Below, piece after piece: positions 46,873 through 56,200 of a DNA stretch of 64,000 nucleotides. The notes under the pieces were generated by a model, which did not search any database, had not been told where the DNA came from, and saw nothing but the letters and a program-made list of their open reading frames with translations. The stretch is from Epithemia pelagica (lineage: Eukaryota > Protista > Bacillariophyta), in the NCBI GenBank assembly GCA_946965045.2, contig OX337242.1, positions 1,984,001 through 2,048,000 of the forward strand. Reading direction: 5' to 3'. A program made the position numbers and the translations under genes. The first letter of the stretch is position 1, and each line of letters starts with the position of its first letter.

Positions 46873-48696
46873 TTACTCAATTTCACGCTCCTTCTTCTCG
46901 TCCTCCGTTTCTTTTTCATCTGCCGCGGGCGTGGGTGTAAACATGGGTTTTCCATCCTTTTCGCGCATCACCAAGAAAATGACAAAGACCAACAATCCCG
47001 CAGCAAAGGCGGCACTAATGGTGATGCCGGCAATGGCACCCGACGACAAGCCATCGTCGCCCGAAGAGGTGGGACAATTGATAAACTGTGCCTTGGCCAG
47101 ATCGTAGCTCCACTTGGGATTCAAGTCAACGTTGGAATAGGGAGCCGAGTAGGGCAACAATTGCGTGACGGGCTGCTCCAAACCGGCAAATTCGGCCTCC
47201 AAGAATCGGCCCTTGTCGACTGCGTGAATAATGGCCTTGCGAACTTCAATATCATCCGTGGGAGTGCGGTTGGTGTTCATGACCAAATTAGCATTCTGCA
47301 AGACATCTGAATGACGCACATCCAAAATGTTGCTACTTTCCACCTTGAACTTGAGATCTTGAACTTGTTGAGCCGAGAGGGGACCTATGCCCAAGGCCAT
47401 GTCCAGCGTTTGATCCAACAAGGCCTCTTCAATTGCTTCTTTACTTTCAAAATGCAAGACTTCCAGAAAGTCAATCTCAGGAGGACCGCCCCAGTAGTCT
47501 TCAAAGCCTTGAAACAAGACCCGTTCATCAATGGCTTCGTCCGAACCTTCCTTGAACTCACGGGACACAAATCGAAAGGGCCCGGTCCCAATAGGTGCCG
47601 ACAAACCAAGACAGGTAACATCCTTCTCCAAATGATCCCACTTATCACCAAAATCTCCGGCATTGCATGAATTGTGCAAATCCGGGTCCGAATCTAGTCC
47701 TTCGGCAAAGGCCTCGGCAGAGGCAAAGGTCAAGGGACGAATGTACGACAATTCTTGAACCAAAGGATAAAACTTGGTCGAAGTTTCCAAGACAAATTGA
47801 CCCTCATCGTTGCACGTCCACGAAGTTAGCAAGGACGTCAAGCCAAACCAGGCATGACGCTGCTTGACGGTATCGGACAAGACATGGTCAAAGTTGAGCT
47901 TGGCCACGGCACAGTTCCAATCACTGCCGTCGTGAAACTTGGTGTTTTTGCGCAAATCAAAGGTTGCACGTTGGCCGCCACTTGGCAATTCTTCAACGGT
48001 CCAATTTGTGGCGAGAGCCGCTTCCAAGTCTCCATCTTGTCCATAATAAACAAGTCCTTCGTAAATCCAAGATTGCGCAAACAGCTGGTTTGGAAAGTAT
48101 TGATGAGGGTTCATGGGACCAATGGACTTGAAGAGGGATCCACCTGCTCCAGGAGCAACAGTGACATTGTTGGAGCCTTCCAAAACCTTGAGGCCAGCAA
48201 TTGGATATGAATAGGTCTGTGGACTGGGCGTGAAACCACCCAAGCGACGATTAATGACATATGGGATTCGAGTTCCCCACAAGGGCAAGAAAATGGCTTG
48301 CTGATGAATGTCATTCAAAATGGTCTTCCATTGAGCCTGAATCTCAGATTCGACCAAGGTTTGCTGCACACGGTCAATGTCATCCAACAATGCTTCACGT
48401 GTAAGAGGTGGTTCAAAACCGTCAATGGCCGAGTATTCGACGTGACTCGGTACCTCCCAAGAATTCAAGTATGTGTGGGGATCGTAGGGACTACCCCAGG
48501 TCCGGGAGAACAAGAGATTGTACTCGCCCGATCGTTCACGTTCAATGTACGTTTCTGAGTCCACAATCTGCGTCTTGACAGTGATACCAATCTTGGCCAA
48601 GTCTTCCACAATGTAAGACTCTACGGCTTGCATTTCAGGATCATCTTCCTTGACAATAAAGATCACTTCACGTTTAATGCATTGATCGGTCGACAT
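46873..48696 (-). CDS. nikA: Circularly permuted NikA-like nickel/metallophore solute-binding protein (SBP family 5) with C-terminal TM anchor
   Basis: GPMNPHQYFPNQLFAQSWIYEGLV...RHAW...YIRP...GTGP (the NikA N-terminal half) lies downstream of RTWGSPYDPH...VPSH...IHQQAIFLP (the NikA C-terminal part). TM GAIAGITISAAFAAGLLVFVIFLVM. Confidence 0.9.
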   Translation of the reverse strand: MSTDQCIKREVIFIVKEDDPEMQAVESYIVEDLAKIGITVKTQIVDSETYIERERSGEYNLLFSRTWGSPYDPHTYLNSWEVPSHVEYSAIDGFEPPLTREALLDDIDRVQQTLVESEIQAQWKTILNDIHQQAIFLPLWGTRIPYVINRRLGGFTPSPQTYSYPIAGLKVLEGSNNVTVAPGAGGSLFKSIGPMNPHQYFPNQLFAQSWIYEGLVYYGQDGDLEAALATNWTVEELPSGGQRATFDLRKNTKFHDGSDWNCAVAKLNFDHVLSDTVKQRHAWFGLTSLLTSWTCNDEGQFVLETSTKFYPLVQELSYIRPLTFASAEAFAEGLDSDPDLHNSCNAGDFGDKWDHLEKDVTCLGLSAPIGTGPFRFVSREFKEGSDEAIDERVLFQGFEDYWGGPPEIDFLEVLHFESKEAIEEALLDQTLDMALGIGPLSAQQVQDLKFKVESSNILDVRHSDVLQNANLVMNTNRTPTDDIEVRKAIIHAVDKGRFLEAEFAGLEQPVTQLLPYSAPYSNVDLNPKWSYDLAKAQFINCPTSSGDDGLSSGAIAGITISAAFAAGLLVFVIFLVMREKDGKPMFTPTPAADEKETEDEKKEREIE

Positions 48697-49157
48697 GATG
48701 TATGAGAAATAGAATGATACTGCAAATGTAGGTCACAAAAGATCTCGACCAAGAGAAAGAATCTTTGGTATCCTCCTTTTACTCTCTGCTTATTCGATGC
48801 AAAACAGGAGAAATAAACATGGATGAGTTTTCGGACAACCGTTGCCGTAGGTCAAACATGGTCAAAACGTACTCTGCAACCCTGGGTCTAAACAACGTTC
48901 CGCTTCTTCTTCGGCCTCGTTGAAAGAAATGGGGAAGGAATGGTGCCAAAGTTTCAAAAAGATTTTGGCCACAAAAGATCTGGGTTCTTTCTACCTCGAC
49001 TACCCAAACGTGCAGAGAGTTCGCGAAGAGGCCTCATTTTTTACACTTCCCCAACTTTTGACAATGGCCATAAAGCGCCTTTGTATCTTGTATCAATCAA
49101 AAAGGCCTCTCGTCGTCATCGCGAAAGAGATCCAACTAGCTAGGCCCAATTTCAACA

Positions 49158-49781
49158 GAGTGAAGTGATTGTCACACCACATCAATTCTTGCAGCAGTTG
49201 TCCAGAATCCTGCATCCTGACACAAACGTCAAAAGCCATCGAGAATCCAGTGAAAAGTGCTCTTCACGCTTCTCAGTTCTCAGTCACACTGGTTGTTGAT
49301 TTAGCCCATTCCTTCGATTTGACCGACCAACGACAATAATTATTGCGCTATTGTATTCACCAAACACACCACTTAACGTCCCTTTTTGTGTTTGACAGTC
49401 TTTTGACACAGCCTCCAGCCTCCCATTCCCAACTCTCATGGTAGTTCGCGAACAGGCCTTATTTTTCATACTCCCCAACAATGGCAACAAAGAGCCTTTG
49501 ACCGAATCACTATCACGGAGTTAAGTGATTGTCACCACATCAATTCTTGCGCTGGCAGCAGCAGTTGCCCATAATCCTGACACCCTCAAGCCATCAAAAT
49601 CTACAAGTAGAATTCAGAGACAAGTGAAAGTGTTCTGACTTCTGACGCGCTTTTCATTCATCCGTCACCCGTCACACTGATTCGCCGAGTCCGTTCATTG
49701 GATTTGACCAACGATAATTTTTGTATTCTCCACACAGCACTTAACGTCTCTTTTTGTGTTTGGCAGACACTCCCATGGTAG
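49158..49781. repeat. Degenerate direct duplication: 49158-49444 vs 49518-49781 (RecQ last codons plus 3' flank)
   Basis: Shared blocks aagtgattgtcac..cacatcaattcttgc, gtcacact, gatttgacc..caacga, cacttaacgtc.ctttttgtgtttg.cag, catggtag. Confidence 0.85.
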
Positions 49782-52440
49782 GTGGTGGTGGAGGAGGAGG
49801 AGGAGGAACCGATCGCTTGGATTGAGACTTGGCCAACAGGGCCTCTCTGGCGGCACGTACCTTGGCCAATTCCTCTTGCAAGCGAGCAGCATCCGAGGCC
49901 AGGTCTGTACTGGATTTGCTCTCGGGCTTGTTCCCCTCCGAATAGGCATTTTGAAAATGCTGCATCGGGTCTGGGGCGGACAGTCTCAAATGCTGAGGAA
50001 TGATAACGCTCTTGTTCGTTGTGGCACGCGTTTCGTCCTCATCCTGATCGTCGTCCTTTGGACCTGCTTTGACTCGGGCCCGAAAGTTTACAAACCCGCT
50101 CTTTTTGTTCTCCAGACACTCAATCGCCTGTCACGCAACAATCCAACAAGTTCCATCAGAACCAAAATCAAGCTCCAATCATTCAAGGACCATGATCGTA
50201 CCTCATACTTTGCCAACAAGGAATCTACGGACTTGGCGGATTTCTTGCCGCGTCTGCTGCTCTTGTCTTGTGCAAAATCCGGCTCTCCAACACCAGTGCT
50301 TCGAATCAAGAGCCCGTCGGCTTCCTCTCGTTCGTTATTCCACGTATCCGCTTCGTCGTCGTCCTCCGAGTCTCCATGAGGACCACTCCATTGACCATCC
50401 CATTGATTCTTGTTGGTGGTGGTGCGGTTGGTAGAAAAGGAAAACTCTTTGGTCGCATGTGCCGCCTCGATGCACCGATGTACCTTATCGGGAGTTTGGC
50501 AAAAATCGCACTTGCGTTGACAAACGGTTCGTGGATCAGTGTTGGGTTCTCCAAAGAATTGTAACAAATACTTTCGACGACATCCTGGCTTCATGCAATA
50601 TTCCATCATCCGTTCCAGTGCGCCCAAGGCCCGTTCGGGGCCCTTCTTTTGATGACTGGCAAGGTACTGAAATCGCGATGCTTCTTCCTTGGAAAAGTAC
50701 ATCAAACTCACCGAGGGAAGACCATCTCGCCCCGCTCTCCCTGACTCTTGATAAAAGGCCTCCACGCTCTGCCATGTTTCAATCAAGTTTGATATAACGT
50801 TGATCAGAAGGGCACAGTTCATTTCATTATCTCCACCTTCCGTAAGTCACGCACTTACCTTGGACAAGGTCCAATGGACGACATAGCGTACGTGAGCGAG
50901 GTCAATCCCCATGCCTGACAAAAAAGATATGGTCAGTCTCAACCAACGCAACACAAACCACTCCGAAAGTGTTGCACGTACCAAAGGCGACAGTCGCCAC
51001 GGCAATGGGCGCCGCACCGGACATCCACGCCTGTTGCATCTCCAACCGATCGACATCCTTCATTCCTCCGTGGTAGGCAATTGCGCGAATGTCCGTGTGT
51101 TTTGAGAGTTCTTGAGCCAACTCTAAGGTATCCGTTTGTTTGTGTACATAGACAATGCCATTGCAAGGACTGTTCGTGTGTTGATCTTTGATGAAGGAAA
51201 TCAGATCCCCCAGGGCTCCATGGACACGATTGTCGTTCGTTTTCTGGCTGGTATCGTCAAAGTCCAAAACTTCCTTGTATCGTACTTGGTAGGTTATATT
51301 GGTTCGATCAAAGGATCCGATATGGCAGGGTTCCTTGTCAAACCTCAATACTTGTCGAATGTCTCGAAGGACCGAGGGCGTAGCAGTGGCCGTACAAGCC
51401 ATGAGAGGAACGGTGGGAAAGGTACCTCGGACCCAACTCAATTGTTGTCGATAGGCCGTCCGGAAATCGTGTCCCCATTCACTAATGCAATGAGCTTCAT
51501 CGACCGCAAAACAAGTGAGACGTTGTTGACCGTGCAGTTCCTGCAAGACGGATCGGAATCGTTCCGTCTTGAGTTGTTCTGGTGTGCAATACAAGAGTGT
51601 GACAGGTCGTGGTGGATGAATGAGCGACGAAGTAGCGGGCGATTTGTTACCCTTTTTTTTGTTTTTACTCCGCAGCGATCTTCGAAGCAGTCGTTCGAGG
51701 AGATCCAACTTTTTGCCTTCGGACAATTGCGAAGACAAAAAGGCGGCGTCAATTTTCTTGTCCAACAAAGCTTGAACTTGATCAGCAATGAGTGCCTTCA
51801 GTGGAGAAATGACAATTGTGGTACCTCCCAGTACCAATGCCGGCAATTGAAAGCAAAGGGATTTTCCGCCTCCAGTTGCCAGGACGACAATTTGACTTTG
51901 TTGTTGCAATGCACAGTCAACGGCCTTGGGTTGCAAATTGCGAAGTTTGGCTATCCCAAATACGTCTTGCATGATTTTTTCGGACTTTTGCTTGAGCTCA
52001 GTGTTGGGAACATTCATAAGGGTTTTGAAGGGAGCCTTATAGATCGAAGAGGAACTGTCCGTAGTTGCCGAAAACATCGTTCCGATGGGTTTGGCACTCG
52101 AGGAAGTTGCATTCTTCACCACTGAATCCTTTTGTGTGGGAGAACTGTCCTTGGATTTCTTGTCGATAGCAGGTTGTGTTTTTGCCTTTTTGACTCGAGT
52201 CTGTTCCTTGGCCACAAGTGTGCCAAACAGGGTTGTTTGGCGTTTCTTTTTGTTGGTGATGGTGGTGTGTTTGGTGGATGATGTTGTTGTGGTTGTGGCA
52301 AGTTTTAACATGCCGCTGCCTTTTCTGGTCTTCTCTGTCGTTCCAGCGTCCGCATCACAAGCCGTGCCGCATATCTCGCACTGCGTTTTACCATTGTCCG
52401 CGTTCCAAAAGGTACAAGCGGAACAAGACCATCCCATCAT
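49741..52440 (-). CDS. RecQ-family DNA helicase with N-terminal RanBP2-type zinc finger; exons 52440-50982, 50914-50859, 50768-50202, 50127-49741
   Basis: WSCSACTFWN..CEICG; ATGGGKSLCFQLPA, FAVDEAHCISEWGHDFR, ACTATAT, YHGG, VATVAFG|MGID, FYQESGRAGRDG, CRRKYLLQFFGE..C..KCDFC. Introns at 50915-50981, 50769-50858 and 50128-50201 splice in frame. Confidence 0.93.
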
Positions 52441-53286: not shown

Positions 53287-56200
53287 TCATGTATCCGTAG
53301 TGCTGCTGGTTAACTCAGCGGACGATGGGTGATCTTTGACAAACTCAGCGGATGGGTGTTCTTTGATAGCCAAAGCGGAATGAGGTTCATCTGATGGGGT
53401 CGAGTTGATCGTATTTGCCCCCAGAAAATCTGGTTGCGGATGACTCGATCCAGCAGTCGTCGGTAAGGAGGCCTCTCCTGCATCTCCTGTTGGATACGCG
53501 GTAGTGGGTTCCATTCCTTCGGCGCTACTTGCAGTGGATAATGGAAGTTGTTGGGTCAGAACGGGCGTTTGCAGAGATCCTCCAAACCGACTTTGAATCA
53601 CCCCTTCCAGAGAGGAACTATCGTCCCGTTGATCCTCCGATGGACTACAATGTTCACTGCCCGGTGGTTGCTGATCGGGGGCAACCACTGCTTCATGGTC
53701 ATACTCGGGTTCCGTTTTGGACGGCGTTCCTCGTGTGAGAAATGGATAGTTGATGAGATTATGATGAAAGGACGGCCGCGGTGCGCCCGCCATGAATTTT
53801 GGTAAGAAATAAATCACGAGGGTGGCAATCACGTCGCAACTTGAAATCAGACTCCGAGCCGCTGCCAAGTCAGCCTTGTTCAATTCCAAGACATGGGTAA
53901 TGGTCCGAATGACGGCAAAGACAAATAGCGAATAAATCAAGGTTGCCAGAGTACGAACTTCCACCACATCGCTTCGCACTTTGCGGGTCTGAAAGGCCAA
54001 GATGGACGCACACAACAGCAACAAGGCTTGCCACGAAGCTTCCAAGAGGTTCCAAAAATCAGCATCTTGACCACAATAATATGTTTGTTCAATAATGGTA
54101 TAAGATTGTTCCCCGCGTCCATTTTCATTCTCGCCATTGGTGCTGGCTGTGAATTCATCGTCTGTGAGTTGTGCTTCACTCTTCTTGCGGGGTGGATCGA
54201 GTGCCGTCCACGCCGTCAACGAGAGACCCACAATGATGGCAATGACCAAGACGGCACCAAACAAGGATGATTTTTGTACTGTGATGCGCCGCAAATTTTG
54301 AGCCGCCAGATAAAGCCGTGAAATGGCCGCCATGCGTACCACCAGGGGCACCAACTCTAGGGTATAGCCGTAGTTGATAAGCCAAATGATAGAGACACAA
54401 ATGGCATTGGTGGGTGGTTGGACGGCCGTCATAAAGGCACCGACGGACACCAACAACAAACCGACCAACAAAAGGGTCAAAAATTCAATTGATACGTTGC
54501 GAATTTTCTTCCGATAGAGAAAGGTCACCCAACCGAATACCAAAGTCAGAAAGGTTGCCACACAGGCGGCGGTCATAGCTGCCACGACCAAAGGGTCCCA
54601 TTCCTCGTCGCGTGAATCCACTACCATCCGAGGGTAGCTTCGAGGGACAAAGGCTCCCAGATAATCGTAATTTTCCACGACCCAGGTACACACGGCATGC
54701 CTGGTATTGAAACTATATTTCTCGTCTCGATAAGTGGGATCAGAACTTCGATTTAACCAGGTTGTAAAGAGTTCACCATATTGGAGATCATTGATCAAAA
54801 AGTTTTTGACGGCTCGATAGGCAGGACTGTGTAGGGCAGAAGGTTGATCCGGAGGATTAGATTGCTGAAATAAGGAGGTACCGATAACCTTCAAGAGGGC
54901 TTGAAACTGCTCGTCGCAAGCACCCCTGCTATCTCCGATCTGAACCGATAGATTGCCATTGCACCGATCAACCGGCTTGGCTTGATGATTTACACATTCT
55001 TGTGTAGGCGGCGGTAAGCTCACGCGATGCATTTCCATATCGGTACCAATGTATTGCTGATACAAGGCTTCGGGCGTCCACCAATGCAGCAGGACATTGG
55101 ATTTGGTAGCATTAGCGGCGGCCCATATCTGGGTCATTTGTTGATAGGTGTATCCCCGTGCAATGGGATCCTGTGGTCCACTGCTCTGTAAACCAATATC
55201 CAAGTGGTACGTTTGTTGCGTAACGAAACTCGACCATCCACATGGAAAATCGACAATCTGAAAGGAGTAGCGAGTAGCACAAGGAGATACGAAACAACCA
55301 GTGAGGACAATTGTTTGAGGATGAGCAGAACCTGACTTGTCCGCATGGCAACAACGCATACCAGACAACTTGACGAGTGGTAGAAATGGATGAAATCCAT
55401 CTAATCATGGGCCAAAGTGTGCATGGGAACCCAAACCTGATAATTTGAACTTACATGGCCAGTGCAATTGTCAGACCAGGTCTCGCAATCATTTTCGGTG
55501 GTATTCCGAAAGTACCCACGAAAGGTGCCTTCCAAAAAGTACATTTTCCCTTCTTCTTTGGTCGCCGGAGCACGAGTGGCAACCTCACTGGGTGTTTCAC
55601 ATTGGTCTGGTGATTCCTCTTCACAATACTCTTTCCAGGAGGTGGGACGCGGCAGGGCGGCCGCCAATTTGTGTCGGTTGGTTGGTCCCTGCAATCCCAA
55701 ATACGTGGTAAAGGAGGTATCGTTGGCTGCCATGTGTTTGGGAATGAACCATCCCTGCCCACCCAAGGCACCCAACCCGGTGGGAGCTTCAATAGTGTTG
55801 TTGTCGTGCAATTCTCGTAATGTTAAATAGTGACCGTTCCACACTTCTGGAATGACATGCCCACAAGATTGATAATCACTGTCTTCTTCATTGCTTTGCT
55901 CGTCCTCCTCGTCCACATTTCTATTTCTTTGGGGATTCCTCAATTTTCGGGTTTTGGAATTCGCCAGTCGACAATCCTGGTATTGGACCGATGTCTTGAG
56001 GGACTTCCAATCGTTGCCCTCGCCATAATCCATGGCCATGTGTGGATCGTAAAAGTCCATTCGTCCCTGAGGAATGCCCGTTTCAATCGTGGCGGGAACT
56101 TGCAAAAATTCCACCAAGAGAATCTGCAAGATCCAGGCACTGAAAATGGCCGATTCCCAATTTTGACTCACAATTCGGACTTCAGGATATTGCAACAAGG

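What the first reader, a model, noticed from the sequence alone, without database searches (positions are those of the whole stretch)
46873..48696. Circularly permuted, membrane-tethered bacterial NikA in a eukaryote, possibly stapled by a new disulfide
Residues ~7-170 correspond to the C-terminal third of E. coli-type NikA (...RTWGSPYDPH...VPSH...LHxxAIFLP...YxxP). Residues ~176-550 correspond to its N-terminal two-thirds (GPMNPHQYFPNQLFAQ...RHAW...IRP...GTGP...YDLAKA). The old termini are joined by a short linker (VLEGSNN). The motifs carrying NikA's Ni-metallophore contacts (RHAW, RP, TWG, PYDP, PSH) are all retained. The new ends fall in the loop after YDxxKA, and each carries a Cys (DQC at the start, FINC before the TM), which would be spatial neighbours and could form a disulfide. 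A C-terminal TM and short tail replace the lipoprotein/periplasmic context, and no permease or ATPase partner lies nearby. This suggests a horizontally acquired surface nickel(-chelate) receptor feeding urease or Ni-SOD by a non-ABC route. A signal peptide could not be resolved upstream of 48696.
Basis: partly seen in the sequence, partly recalled or inferred. Interest (0 to 1): 0.86.

Follow-up and report, generated by a model that had tools for sequence, protein, structure and literature searches.

The report
Circularly permuted NikA-like zinc receptor ZCRP-B
This diatom gene encodes the already published membrane protein ZCRP-B, made when zinc or cobalt is scarce; its bacterial NikA-type binding domain is wired in a swapped (circularly permuted) order, which appears not to have been reported, so nickel uptake is not its likely role.

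Summary
ORF 46873-48696(-), 607 aa, matches NikA in swapped order: residues 6-172 = NikA mature ~337-500, a 4-residue linker, residues 177-539 = NikA ~1-318, then a C-terminal TM helix and short tail. AlphaFold is confident (pLDDT 93.6) and best fold matches are NikA/CntA. More than 140 algal homologues share the order; none of 80 best bacterial loci does. A tree puts the permuted clade beside canonical-order, TM-tethered algal paralogues (haptophyte included) carrying the same TM/tail module, so the permutation probably arose inside eukaryotes. Cys6 and Cys541 occur in 81/81 permuted proteins and in no canonical relative, which fits a disulfide staple; the distance could not be measured. NikA's chelate-contact residues are retained. 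The interpretation needs correcting: this family is published as ZCRP-B (Kellogg 2022), induced by low Zn/Co and localised to the cell membrane in P. tricornutum, so a nickel/urease role is unsupported. That paper does not mention the permutation. There is no signal peptide: an in-frame stop lies 13 codons upstream in the same exon, and 52/81 family members (named ones all diatoms) also lack one, leaving topology open. The scan had not noted this before.

The parts
46873..48696 (-). Complete intron-less CDS, 607 aa (P0001): ZCRP-B-type, circularly permuted NikA-like SBP5 protein
   Evidence: (PF00496, 165 bits)
48181..48681 (-). Residues 6-172, equivalent to NikA mature ~337-500 (the C-terminal third); carries W67, Y71, H85 (= NikA W398, Y402, H416)
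48169..48180 (-). Residues 173-176 (EGSN): short linker joining the old C-terminus of the NikA fold to its old N-terminus
   Evidence: pLDDT 95-98 across 161-180; bridged by 112-nt contigs 48106-48217 in runs X2 and X3
47074..48168 (-). Residues 177-541, equivalent to NikA mature ~1-318 (the N-terminal two-thirds); carries Y200, R280, H281, W283, R320 (= NikA Y22, R97, H98, W100, R137)
48679..48681 (-). Cys6 codon, at the new N-terminus, just before strand 9-16
   Evidence: 81/81 permuted proteins, 0/8 canonical eukaryotic, 0/78 bacterial
47074..47076 (-). Cys541 codon, at the new C-terminal end of the fold, just after helix 533-540 and about 10 residues before the TM
   Evidence: 81/81 permuted proteins (within +-2 columns), 0 in canonical forms
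47812..47913 (-). Span holding the Cys262 and Cys295 codons: a second Cys pair specific to the permuted family
47611..47667 (-). Span holding the Cys344 and Cys362 codons: a Cys pair shared with the canonical-order eukaryotic paralogues and absent from bacteria
46957..47043 (-). Residues 552-580: single C-terminal transmembrane helix
   Evidence: AlphaFold helix 552-580; hydrophobicity 2.69; acidic N-flank and K/R-rich C-flank
46873..46956 (-). Residues 581-607 plus stop: short tail. The conserved R-E-K-x-G-K-P-x-F motif runs across the end of the helix into the tail (residues ~578-586)
   Evidence: motif in 61/81; the same motif occurs in canonical-order P0197, P0158 and P0221
48786..48872 (-). 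87-nt GT..AG intron in the 5' UTR
   Evidence: spliced contig in RNA-like run X3; intron ends GTACGT..AAGCAG
48733..48735 (-). In-frame TGA 13 codons upstream of the ATG, in the same exon; it rules out an N-terminal extension or signal-peptide exon in this transcript
   Evidence: X3 contig is continuous from 48188 to 48785

Best explanation
The gene encodes a diatom ZCRP-B (Zn/Co-responsive protein B). It is a single-pass membrane protein whose large domain is a NikA/CntA-type cluster-C solute-binding fold in circularly permuted order: old C-terminal third, 4-residue linker, old N-terminal two-thirds, then a TM helix and a short basic tail. SHOWN here: the permuted order; its conservation in more than 140 algal proteins; its absence from the 80 best bacterial loci; a confident NikA-like fold; and retention of NikA's chelate-contact residues. 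Also shown: three Cys pairs absent from bacterial NikA, two of them exclusive to the permuted form, one of which flanks the new termini. Also shown: canonical-order algal paralogues with the same TM/tail module as nearest relatives, and no ABC partner nearby. FROM THE LITERATURE: induction at low Zn2+/Co2+ and cell-membrane localisation. INFERRED: (1) a bacterial NikA-type gene entered algae and acquired a signal peptide and TM tether; the SBP part was then permuted inside eukaryotes (for example by internal duplication N-C-N-C followed by two deletions). This moved the tether point from the old C-terminus to the excised hairpin, and the cut was closed by a Cys6-Cys541 disulfide. (2) The protein captures Zn or Co as a carboxylate-bearing chelate complex, with His85 touching the metal and R280/R320/W67/Y71/W283 holding the chelator, as in NikA-Ni(His)2. 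(3) It passes the cargo to a non-ABC route: neighbouring ZIP-type transporters, or endocytosis as for ISIP2a.
For: Swapped HSPs to NikA. Residue map and excised hairpin. SBP_bac_5 at 165 bits. AlphaFold pLDDT 93.6 and pTM 0.86. Foldseek top hits are NikA 4oer/3dp8/1zlq and CntA 5yh8. 145 retrieved proteins have a junction-spanning collinear match and 46 are canonical. 73 of 80 bacterial loci were scored canonical, the other 7 are canonical by inspection, and none is permuted. In the tree the permuted clade has support 100*, the canonical TM-tethered eukaryotic clade is sister (90), and all eukaryote-type rows are split from bacteria at 99*. Calcidiscus leptoporus sits in the canonical clade. 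The TM/tail motif is shared. Cys statistics. Ligand-site conservation: Y22, H98, W100, R137, W398, Y402 at 80-81/81, R97 at 76/81, H416 at 74/81. Family identity and Zn/Co response: PMC9010474 main text and supplement, where the printed T. pseudonana ZCRP-B has the same permuted order and a C-terminal TM. Low-Zn induction was repeated. Neighbours are eukaryotic and no ABC parts are present.
Against: No metal or ligand binding has been measured for any family member. In PMC9010474, ZCRP-B overexpression did not raise 57Co uptake. The Cys6-Cys541 distance could not be measured because model coordinates are not exposed, and the sequential Foldseek alignment covers only ~380 columns. This protein and 52/81 relatives have no signal peptide, so an exofacial domain needs an unexplained export route. 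Identity of this ORF with Phatr2 49168 is probable but unproven, because the window's own names are masked and the supplement's alignment is badly machine-read. Support for the sister relation is 90 SH-aLRT on a quick tree. Only the best 80 of 369 bacterial relatives were checked for order.
Confidence: 0.8

Rival explanations
1. One reading: a surface nickel(-chelate) receptor supplying urease or Ni-SOD.
For: NikA is the best sequence and fold match. The Ni-contacting His (NikA H416 = H85) and the chelator-contacting residues are retained. The related CntA carries Ni, Co and Zn complexes (PDB titles; PMC9010474), so a broad specificity that includes Ni is not excluded.
Against: Protein abundance follows Zn2+ and Co2+ scarcity in three diatoms. 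No nickel or urea response is reported. The TIGR02294 NikA equivalog score of 285 is below its cutoff of 393. There are no nikBCDE genes.
Confidence: 0.1
2. In the diatoms that lack a signal peptide, including this one, the protein is tail-anchored with the NikA-like domain facing the cytosol. It would act as a membrane-bound intracellular Zn/Co-chelate acceptor or buffer below the transporters, not as a surface ligand.
For: There is no signal peptide: an in-frame stop lies 13 codons upstream in the same exon. 52/81 homologues, including 'complete' MMETSP transcript ORFs, start 2-17 hydrophilic residues before Cys6. The single TM lies ~30 residues from the C-terminus. No known pathway moves a 550-residue N-terminal domain across a membrane after synthesis (general knowledge).
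Against: All six Cys are kept in 51-52 of the 52 SP-less proteins. The TM flanks obey positive-inside for a cytosolic tail (N-flank net -1.2, C-flank 3.6 K+R). The tail motif is shared with signal-peptide-bearing orthologues. The YFP fusion is at the cell membrane and the authors' topology prediction puts the bulk outside.
Confidence: 0.15
3. The swapped order is an artefact of assembly or gene modelling, such as a fusion across two tandem nikA copies.
For: Circular permutations often arise from tandem duplicates, and Logan contigs break near the junction at 48135-48188.
Against: It is one uninterrupted ORF. The junction is bridged by 112-nt contigs in two allelic forms in independent runs. 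The same order occurs in more than 140 proteins from independent genomes, metagenomes and transcriptomes, and in the published T. pseudonana protein, which was detected with 18-21 unique peptides. No NikA-like sequence flanks the ORF.
Confidence: 0.01
4. The domain binds a non-metal ligand (peptide, opine or another small molecule), and the Zn/Co response is indirect.
For: SBP5 is mostly a peptide/opine family, and no binding data exist.
Against: The NikA-specific metallophore residues, including the metal-touching His, are conserved far better than in the canonical algal paralogues, which lost R97 and H416. The nearest structures are all metal-chelate binders.
Confidence: 0.04

Closest known systems
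ZCRP-B (Zn/Co-responsive protein B) of marine diatoms, Kellogg et al. 2022, Nat Commun 13:1995 (PMC9010474); P. tricornutum Phatr2 49168, T. pseudonana Thaps3_bd 938
   Same: Same family and very probably the same gene as the P. tricornutum entry. It is a NikA-like SBP5 domain of about 30% identity to E. coli NikA (29-31% here; 30.5% in the paper) with a single TM and no NikB/C. The printed T. pseudonana sequence has the same permuted order.
   Different: The paper treats it as a plain NikA homologue and contains no mention of permutation. It places the TM 'near the N-terminus', whereas here it is C-terminal. It does not discuss the Cys pairs, the missing signal peptide of the P. tricornutum type, or the canonical-order paralogues.
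E. coli / Brucella NikA (PDB 1uiv, 1zlq, 3dp8, 4oer), the periplasmic Ni-(L-His)2 binding protein of the NikABCDE ABC importer
   Same: Same fold, and the ligand-contact residues Y22, R97, H98, W100, R137, W398, Y402 and H416 are conserved.
   Different: The segment order is permuted and an ~18-residue hairpin is deleted. There are six conserved Cys where bacterial NikA has none at those positions. It is membrane-tethered by a TM helix, has no permease or ATPase partner, responds to Zn/Co rather than Ni, and scores below the TIGR02294 cutoff.
S. aureus CntA (PDB 5yh5, 5yh8, 5yhe), the staphylopine-metal binding SBP
   Same: Second-best fold and family match. It binds Ni, Co and Zn as an opine-metallophore complex and works under Zn limitation, which is the best functional analogy for a Zn/Co-chelate receptor.
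   Different: CntA has canonical order, is a lipoprotein and feeds an ABC permease. No staphylopine-like pathway was examined here.
Canonical-order, TM-tethered algal NikA-like proteins (P0197, P0158, P0221; clade includes Calcidiscus leptoporus)
   Same: Nearest relatives in the tree. They share the signal peptide of non-diatom ZCRP-B, the C-terminal TM with the R-E-K-x-G-K-P-x-F tail, and the Cys344/Cys362 pair.
   Different: They keep the canonical N-then-C order, carry large insertions, lack Cys6/541 and Cys262/295, and have replaced NikA R97 and H416.
ISIP2a phytotransferrin of diatoms
   Same: A functional analogy taken from PMC9010474: a surface-exposed, single-TM-anchored metal-binding protein induced by metal scarcity and taken up by endocytosis.
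   Different: It has an unrelated fold, is specific for iron, and has a signal peptide.

Membership tests
Pfam SBP_bac_5 (PF00496), cluster-C solute-binding proteins | Score above Pfam's gathering threshold | tested here: met
   165.2 bits against a cutoff of 32.4, in 2 stretches
NikA (NCBIfam TIGR02294 equivalog) | Whole-protein score above the curated cutoff | tested here: not met
   285 bits against a cutoff of 393, split into 3 stretches
NikA (NCBIfam TIGR02294 equivalog) | Collinear domain order with bacterial NikA | tested here: not met
   Swapped HSPs
NikA (NCBIfam TIGR02294 equivalog) | Partnership with NikBCDE permease and ATPase genes | tested here: not met
   No ABC parts within about 12 kb. 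No NikB/C in the P. tricornutum proteome (PMC9010474).
NikA (NCBIfam TIGR02294 equivalog) | Metallophore-contact residues (R97, W100, R137, W398, Y402, H416) | tested here: met
   R280, W283, R320, W67, Y71 and H85 are all present, and are kept in 74-81 of 81 family members. The role of H416 is given by the title of PDB 3qim; the roles of the other residues are from my recollection of the NikA literature.
NikA (NCBIfam TIGR02294 equivalog) | Binds Ni-(L-His)2 and supports nickel uptake | not testable with these tools
   No binding data exist. Published expression follows Zn/Co, not Ni.
ZCRP-B (Kellogg et al. 2022) | NikA-like SBP5 domain plus a single TM in a marine alga, homologous to the published ZCRP-B proteins | tested here: met
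   Homologues of 55-65% identity in Pseudo-nitzschia and Thalassiosirales. The printed T. pseudonana ZCRP-B has the same architecture, and its peptides match the deep permuted clade P0119/P0114/P0121.
ZCRP-B (Kellogg et al. 2022) | Abundance rises at low Zn2+/Co2+ | not tested
   Literature only. Run X3 shows only that the gene is transcribed and spliced.
ZCRP-B (Kellogg et al. 2022) | Localises to the cell membrane | not testable with these tools
   YFP fusion in P. tricornutum (PMC9010474). A TM helix is predicted here.
Natural circular permutant | Two segments in swapped order relative to homologues, with the old termini joined by a linker | tested here: met
   NikA ~500 is followed after 4 residues by NikA ~1, and the new termini lie at NikA ~318/337
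Natural circular permutant | The same three-dimensional fold is retained | tested here: inconclusive
   The model is confident and compact (pTM 0.86) and NikA is the top fold hit. Foldseek aligns sequentially (~380 columns, TMt 0.55), and no permutation-aware superposition was available.
Tail-anchored membrane proteins | No signal peptide and a single TM close to the C-terminus | tested here: met
   the TM is 552-580 and 27 residues follow
Tail-anchored membrane proteins | N-terminal domain faces the cytosol | not testable with these tools
   Indirect indicators point the other way: conserved Cys pairs, a positive-inside C-flank, and a tail motif shared with signal-peptide-bearing orthologues.

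The most novel reading that the evidence does not exclude
ZCRP-B is a natural circular permutant of a cluster-C ABC solute-binding protein, and the permutation was created inside eukaryotes from an already TM-tethered canonical ancestor. The rearrangement moved the membrane tether from the old C-terminus to an excised surface hairpin. It was fixed together with a new Cys6-Cys541 disulfide that replaces the lost backbone link. A large group of diatoms then lost the signal peptide. So either a 550-residue disulfide-bonded domain reaches the cell surface by an unknown route, or the published 'surface zinc ligand' model is wrong for those species and the domain works on the cytosolic side.
Probability: 0.5. 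Interest if true: 0.72.

Novelty: new variant of a known kind. Interest (0 to 1): 0.6.

Why it matters
ZCRP-B is used as a field biomarker of zinc stress in the ocean and is proposed as the high-affinity zinc-capturing ligand of diatoms, yet nothing is known of its structure or ligand.

Three points follow from this work:
- **Ligand:** it is a circularly permuted NikA fold that keeps NikA's chelate-contact residues. This predicts that it binds Zn or Co as an organic complex rather than as free ion, which bears on which zinc pool in seawater is bioavailable.
- **Evolution:** the permutation, its private Cys pairs and the canonical-order paralogues with the same tether give a rare natural series for studying how a bilobed binding protein tolerates re-wiring.
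- **Topology:** the missing signal peptide in P. tricornutum-type proteins is a direct, testable challenge to the current surface-ligand model.

Tried and rejected
- **Upstream signal-peptide exon:** rejected. RNA-like run X3 shows only an 87-nt 5'-UTR intron. An in-frame TGA lies in the ATG's own exon. No Met-initiated hydrophobic ORF exists in 48697-50088.
- **Bacterial permuted donor:** not found. 0 of the 80 best loci from 185,579 species genomes are permuted, and none of the 46 canonical representatives is.
- **Tandem N-C-N-C intermediate:** not found among the 268 retrieved proteins. The multi-stretch hits are canonical proteins with insertions plus the shared TM/tail.
- **Shorter ~500-aa hits as soluble or bacterial forms:** rejected. 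They are N-terminally truncated models of the same TM-anchored protein.
- **Naming the organism or matching Phatr2 49168 exactly:** not possible, because the window's own names are masked and the supplement's alignment is poorly machine-read.
- **Conserved N-glycosylation site in the linker (NVT 177-179):** rejected, as it is not conserved in other diatoms.
- **Runs X1, X2 and X4:** these behave as DNA (even depth over intergenic DNA; X4 has a GATC-GATC ligation-type junction), so only X3 informs on transcripts.
- **Earlier scan notes:** none concerned this locus.
Full report
**1. What is in the sequence**

The minus strand of 46873-48696 holds one uninterrupted 607-codon ORF. Pfam finds only SBP_bac_5 (165 bits, two stretches). 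NCBIfam's best model is the NikA equivalog TIGR02294. It scores 285 bits in three stretches, below its cutoff of 393.

phmmer against all PDB sequences gives NikA of Brucella (4oer, 5.9e-61) and E. coli (1zlq, 6.4e-56) as best hits. The matched stretches are in swapped order: query 23-170 on NikA 352-498, and query 191-537 on NikA 11-316. BLASTP against E. coli NikA taken from MG1655 (L081) repeats this, with 29% identity over 352 columns and 31% over 167.

I cut the family at the junction, re-joined it in NikA order and aligned it with NikA. The map is:
- query 6-172 = NikA mature 337-500
- four linker residues, 173-176
- query 177-539 = NikA from about its first mature residue to 318
- NikA ~319-336, the hairpin after the conserved Y-D-x-x-K-A helix, has no counterpart

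**2. It is not an artefact**

The junction is covered by 112-nt contigs (48106-48217) in two allelic forms in independent public runs. The variants seen across the CDS are mostly synonymous: 9 synonymous and 5 conservative.

The word-indexed search returned 269 homologues. The best 120 have 44-65% identity, most of them over ~97% of the query's length. Named hits include Pseudo-nitzschia, Cyclotella, Conticribra, Skeletonema, Seminavis, Nitzschia, Cylindrotheca, the cryptophyte Rhodomonas salina and the prasinophyte Pycnococcus provasolii. Several come from transcriptomes.

Of the 268 proteins retrieved:
- 145 have a single HSP running across the junction, so they are permuted
- 46 show the swapped pattern, so they are canonical NikA order
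- 77 are fragments

The neighbourhood is ordinary eukaryotic nuclear DNA. It holds a galactosyltransferase, PDZ and RING proteins, a RecQ helicase with a 74-nt intron and a class-C GPCR. There are no ABC transporter parts.

**3. Fold**

AlphaFold2 with an 81-sequence family alignment gives mean pLDDT 93.6 and pTM 0.86. Confidence is high across the old-termini linker. Helix 552-580 is the TM segment.

Foldseek's best PDB matches are NikA (4oer, 3dp8, 1zlq and others), then CntA with staphylopine-Ni/Co (5yh8, 5yhe). Each aligns over ~380 columns with TM-score ~0.55 by target length. This is what a sequential aligner must give for a permuted full-length match.

A permutation-aware superposition was not available and the coordinates are not exposed. 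Retention of the whole fold is therefore very likely but not formally shown.

**4. Where the permutation arose**

A scan of one genome for each of 185,579 bacterial and archaeal species found 369 relatives. The best 80 have 29-35% identity. In 73 of them my script scored the order as canonical. In the other 7 the HSP for the C-terminal third also lies downstream. None is permuted.

Among the canonical representatives, several are not bacterial in character. P0197, P0158 and P0221 have an N-terminal signal peptide where complete. They carry large insertions and end in the same module as the permuted family: L-S-x-G-A-I-x-G-I, a TM helix, then R/K-E-K-x-G-K/Q-P-x-F. P0197 matches query 550-588 at 49% identity. 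One member of this clade's clusters is from the haptophyte Calcidiscus leptoporus.

The maximum-likelihood tree has 108 rows and 517 columns (LG+C20 PMSF, SH-aLRT). It includes permuted sequences re-joined in NikA order, the canonical representatives, 39 named bacterial NikA and E. coli NikA. It shows:
- the permuted family as one clade (100*)
- the canonical TM-tethered algal clade as its sister (90)
- both, together with P0149, P0150 and P0170, separated from all 78 remaining rows by a 99* branch

With the root among bacteria, the ancestor of the algal clade was canonical and the permuted order is derived. It arose once, inside eukaryotes.

The TM stays C-terminal in both forms, so a simple whole-gene tandem fusion does not explain the change. 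An internal duplication of the SBP part (N-C-N-C-TM) followed by two deletions, or a segment transposition, is needed. No such intermediate was found. No bacterial donor lineage can be named.

**5. Cysteines**

Cys6 and Cys541 lie directly on the two sides of the excised hairpin. Within +-2 alignment columns they are present in 81/81 permuted proteins. They are present in 0/8 canonical algal relatives and 0/78 bacterial NikA. Cys262/Cys295 show the same pattern. Cys344/Cys362 are shared with the canonical algal clade (7/8) and absent from bacteria.

So one pair predates the permutation and two pairs came with it. One of those two sits exactly where the backbone was cut. This is what a disulfide staple predicts, but co-occurrence and position are the only evidence. 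The distance was not measured.

**6. Ligand site**

The table compares the positions that hold the metal-chelate in E. coli NikA with the permuted family.

| NikA position | Residue here | Kept in permuted family |
|---|---|---|
| Y22 | Y200 | 81/81 |
| R97 | R280 | 76/81 |
| H98 | H281 | 81/81 |
| W100 | W283 | 80/81 |
| R137 | R320 | 81/81 |
| W398 | W67 | 81/81 |
| Y402 | Y71 | 81/81 |
| H416 | H85 | 74/81 |

The role of H416 is supported by the title of PDB 3qim. The roles of the other residues are from my recollection of the NikA literature.

The canonical algal paralogues have replaced R97 (by F, Y, M or W) and H416 (by E or S). The permuted family therefore keeps a NikA-like pocket. It most likely binds a metal held by a carboxylate-bearing organic chelator, with one protein histidine completing the coordination.

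**7. What is already known**

The family is published. Kellogg et al. 2022 (PMC9010474) named it ZCRP-B.
- A YFP fusion is at the cell membrane in P. tricornutum.
- The authors noted 30.5% identity to E. coli NikA, 25.6% identity to CntA and the absence of NikB/C.
- They proposed a surface-tethered zinc ligand that feeds ZIP transporters or is endocytosed like ISIP2a.

The supplement prints the T. pseudonana protein (Thaps3_bd 938, 624 aa). It has a signal peptide, the same permuted order and a C-terminal TM. The supplement lists P. tricornutum ZCRP-B as Phatr2 49168. Short T. pseudonana peptides best match the deep-branching permuted clade P0119/P0114/P0121. A 2026 preprint again finds ZCRP-B only in low-Zn cultures.

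The word stem 'permut' does not occur in the paper. Only three papers in the library mention ZCRP-B. None of the papers retrieved for 'circular permutation' with 'solute-binding protein' concerns this family, judging by their titles and abstracts. The paper places the TM 'near the N-terminus', and here it is clearly C-terminal.

Given CntA's Ni/Co/Zn range, some nickel binding cannot be excluded.

**8. The missing signal peptide**

Run X3 behaves as RNA. Its depth drops to zero 3' of the gene and its contigs are spliced. It shows an 87-nt GT..AG intron at 48786-48872 and is then continuous to beyond the ATG. An in-frame TGA lies 13 codons upstream of the ATG in the same exon, whether or not the intron is removed. 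No signal-peptide-like ORF lies upstream.

Across the family, 52 of 81 aligned members begin 2-17 hydrophilic residues before Cys6. All the named ones are diatoms, and they include transcript-derived 'complete' ORFs. The other 29 have a hydrophobic leader, and so do all deep branches.

The SP-less proteins keep the six Cys (52/52 at five positions, 51/52 at Cys362). They have an acidic N-flank and a K/R-rich C-flank around the TM. In 39/52 they keep the tail motif shared with SP-bearing orthologues. This argues for the same outside-facing topology, yet no known pathway would export such a domain without a signal peptide. The alternative is a tail-anchored protein with a cytosolic NikA-like domain. 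I give that about 15%, and it would overturn the surface-ligand model for these species.

**9. Verdict**

The gene is a member, probably the P. tricornutum member, of the known ZCRP-B family. Five things appear to be new:
- the circular permutation
- its origin within eukaryotes from a canonical TM-tethered ancestor
- the permutation-specific Cys pairs
- the retained NikA chelate pocket
- the signal-peptide paradox

Noticed in passing
window 49018-49766: The region upstream of the gene holds three pairs of direct repeats (25-35 nt, 80-91% identical) at a constant spacing of 368-425 bp. This amounts to a diverged ~400-bp duplication of the promoter region and could carry duplicated regulatory (Zn-responsive?) elements.
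   Followed up: partly
P0133 (1037 aa; cluster includes Diacronema lutheri): A haptophyte protein fuses a permuted ZCRP-B-type SBP5 domain to a second periplasmic-binding-protein domain (Peripla_BP_2, the BtuF/FhuD type, 2.6e-11) before a C-terminal hydrophobic TM-like segment. That makes two different bacterial SBP folds on one tether.
   Followed up: partly
P0021 (763 aa): One permuted family member has a signal peptide and an extra ~160-residue N-terminal domain with no Pfam match, placed before the conserved Cys.
   Followed up: no
L083:2377-3351 and L082:5718-7055: The canonical-order TM-tethered algal paralogues sit next to metal-handling genes on marine metagenome contigs. A ferroportin-family gene (FPN1) lies beside P0269, and a ferric-reductase-domain gene lies beside P0278.
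   Followed up: no
window 48106-48217 and whole CDS: Two allelic contig versions differ at 4 sites within 52 nt around the linker (K170N plus three synonymous changes). Across the CDS, 9 of 14 variants are synonymous, which is consistent with purifying selection.
   Followed up: yes
window 50127-50200 (-): Run X3 shows a 74-nt GT..AG intron in the C-terminal part of the neighbouring RecQ-type helicase gene (ORFs 50088-50822 and 50902-52440). The same contig runs on through the ~1.1-kb intergenic region towards the ZCRP-B gene.
   Followed up: no
window 53287-55368 (-): An ORF with a class-C GPCR seven-transmembrane domain (7tm_3, 1.8e-28) lies 5 kb upstream.
   Followed up: no
PMC9010474, section on ZCRP-B sequence analysis: The paper states that the single TM of P. 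tricornutum ZCRP-B is near the N-terminus. In this ORF and in all homologues the TM is C-terminal. In signal-peptide-bearing members such as T. pseudonana ZCRP-B, the N-terminal hydrophobic stretch is a leader.
   Followed up: yes
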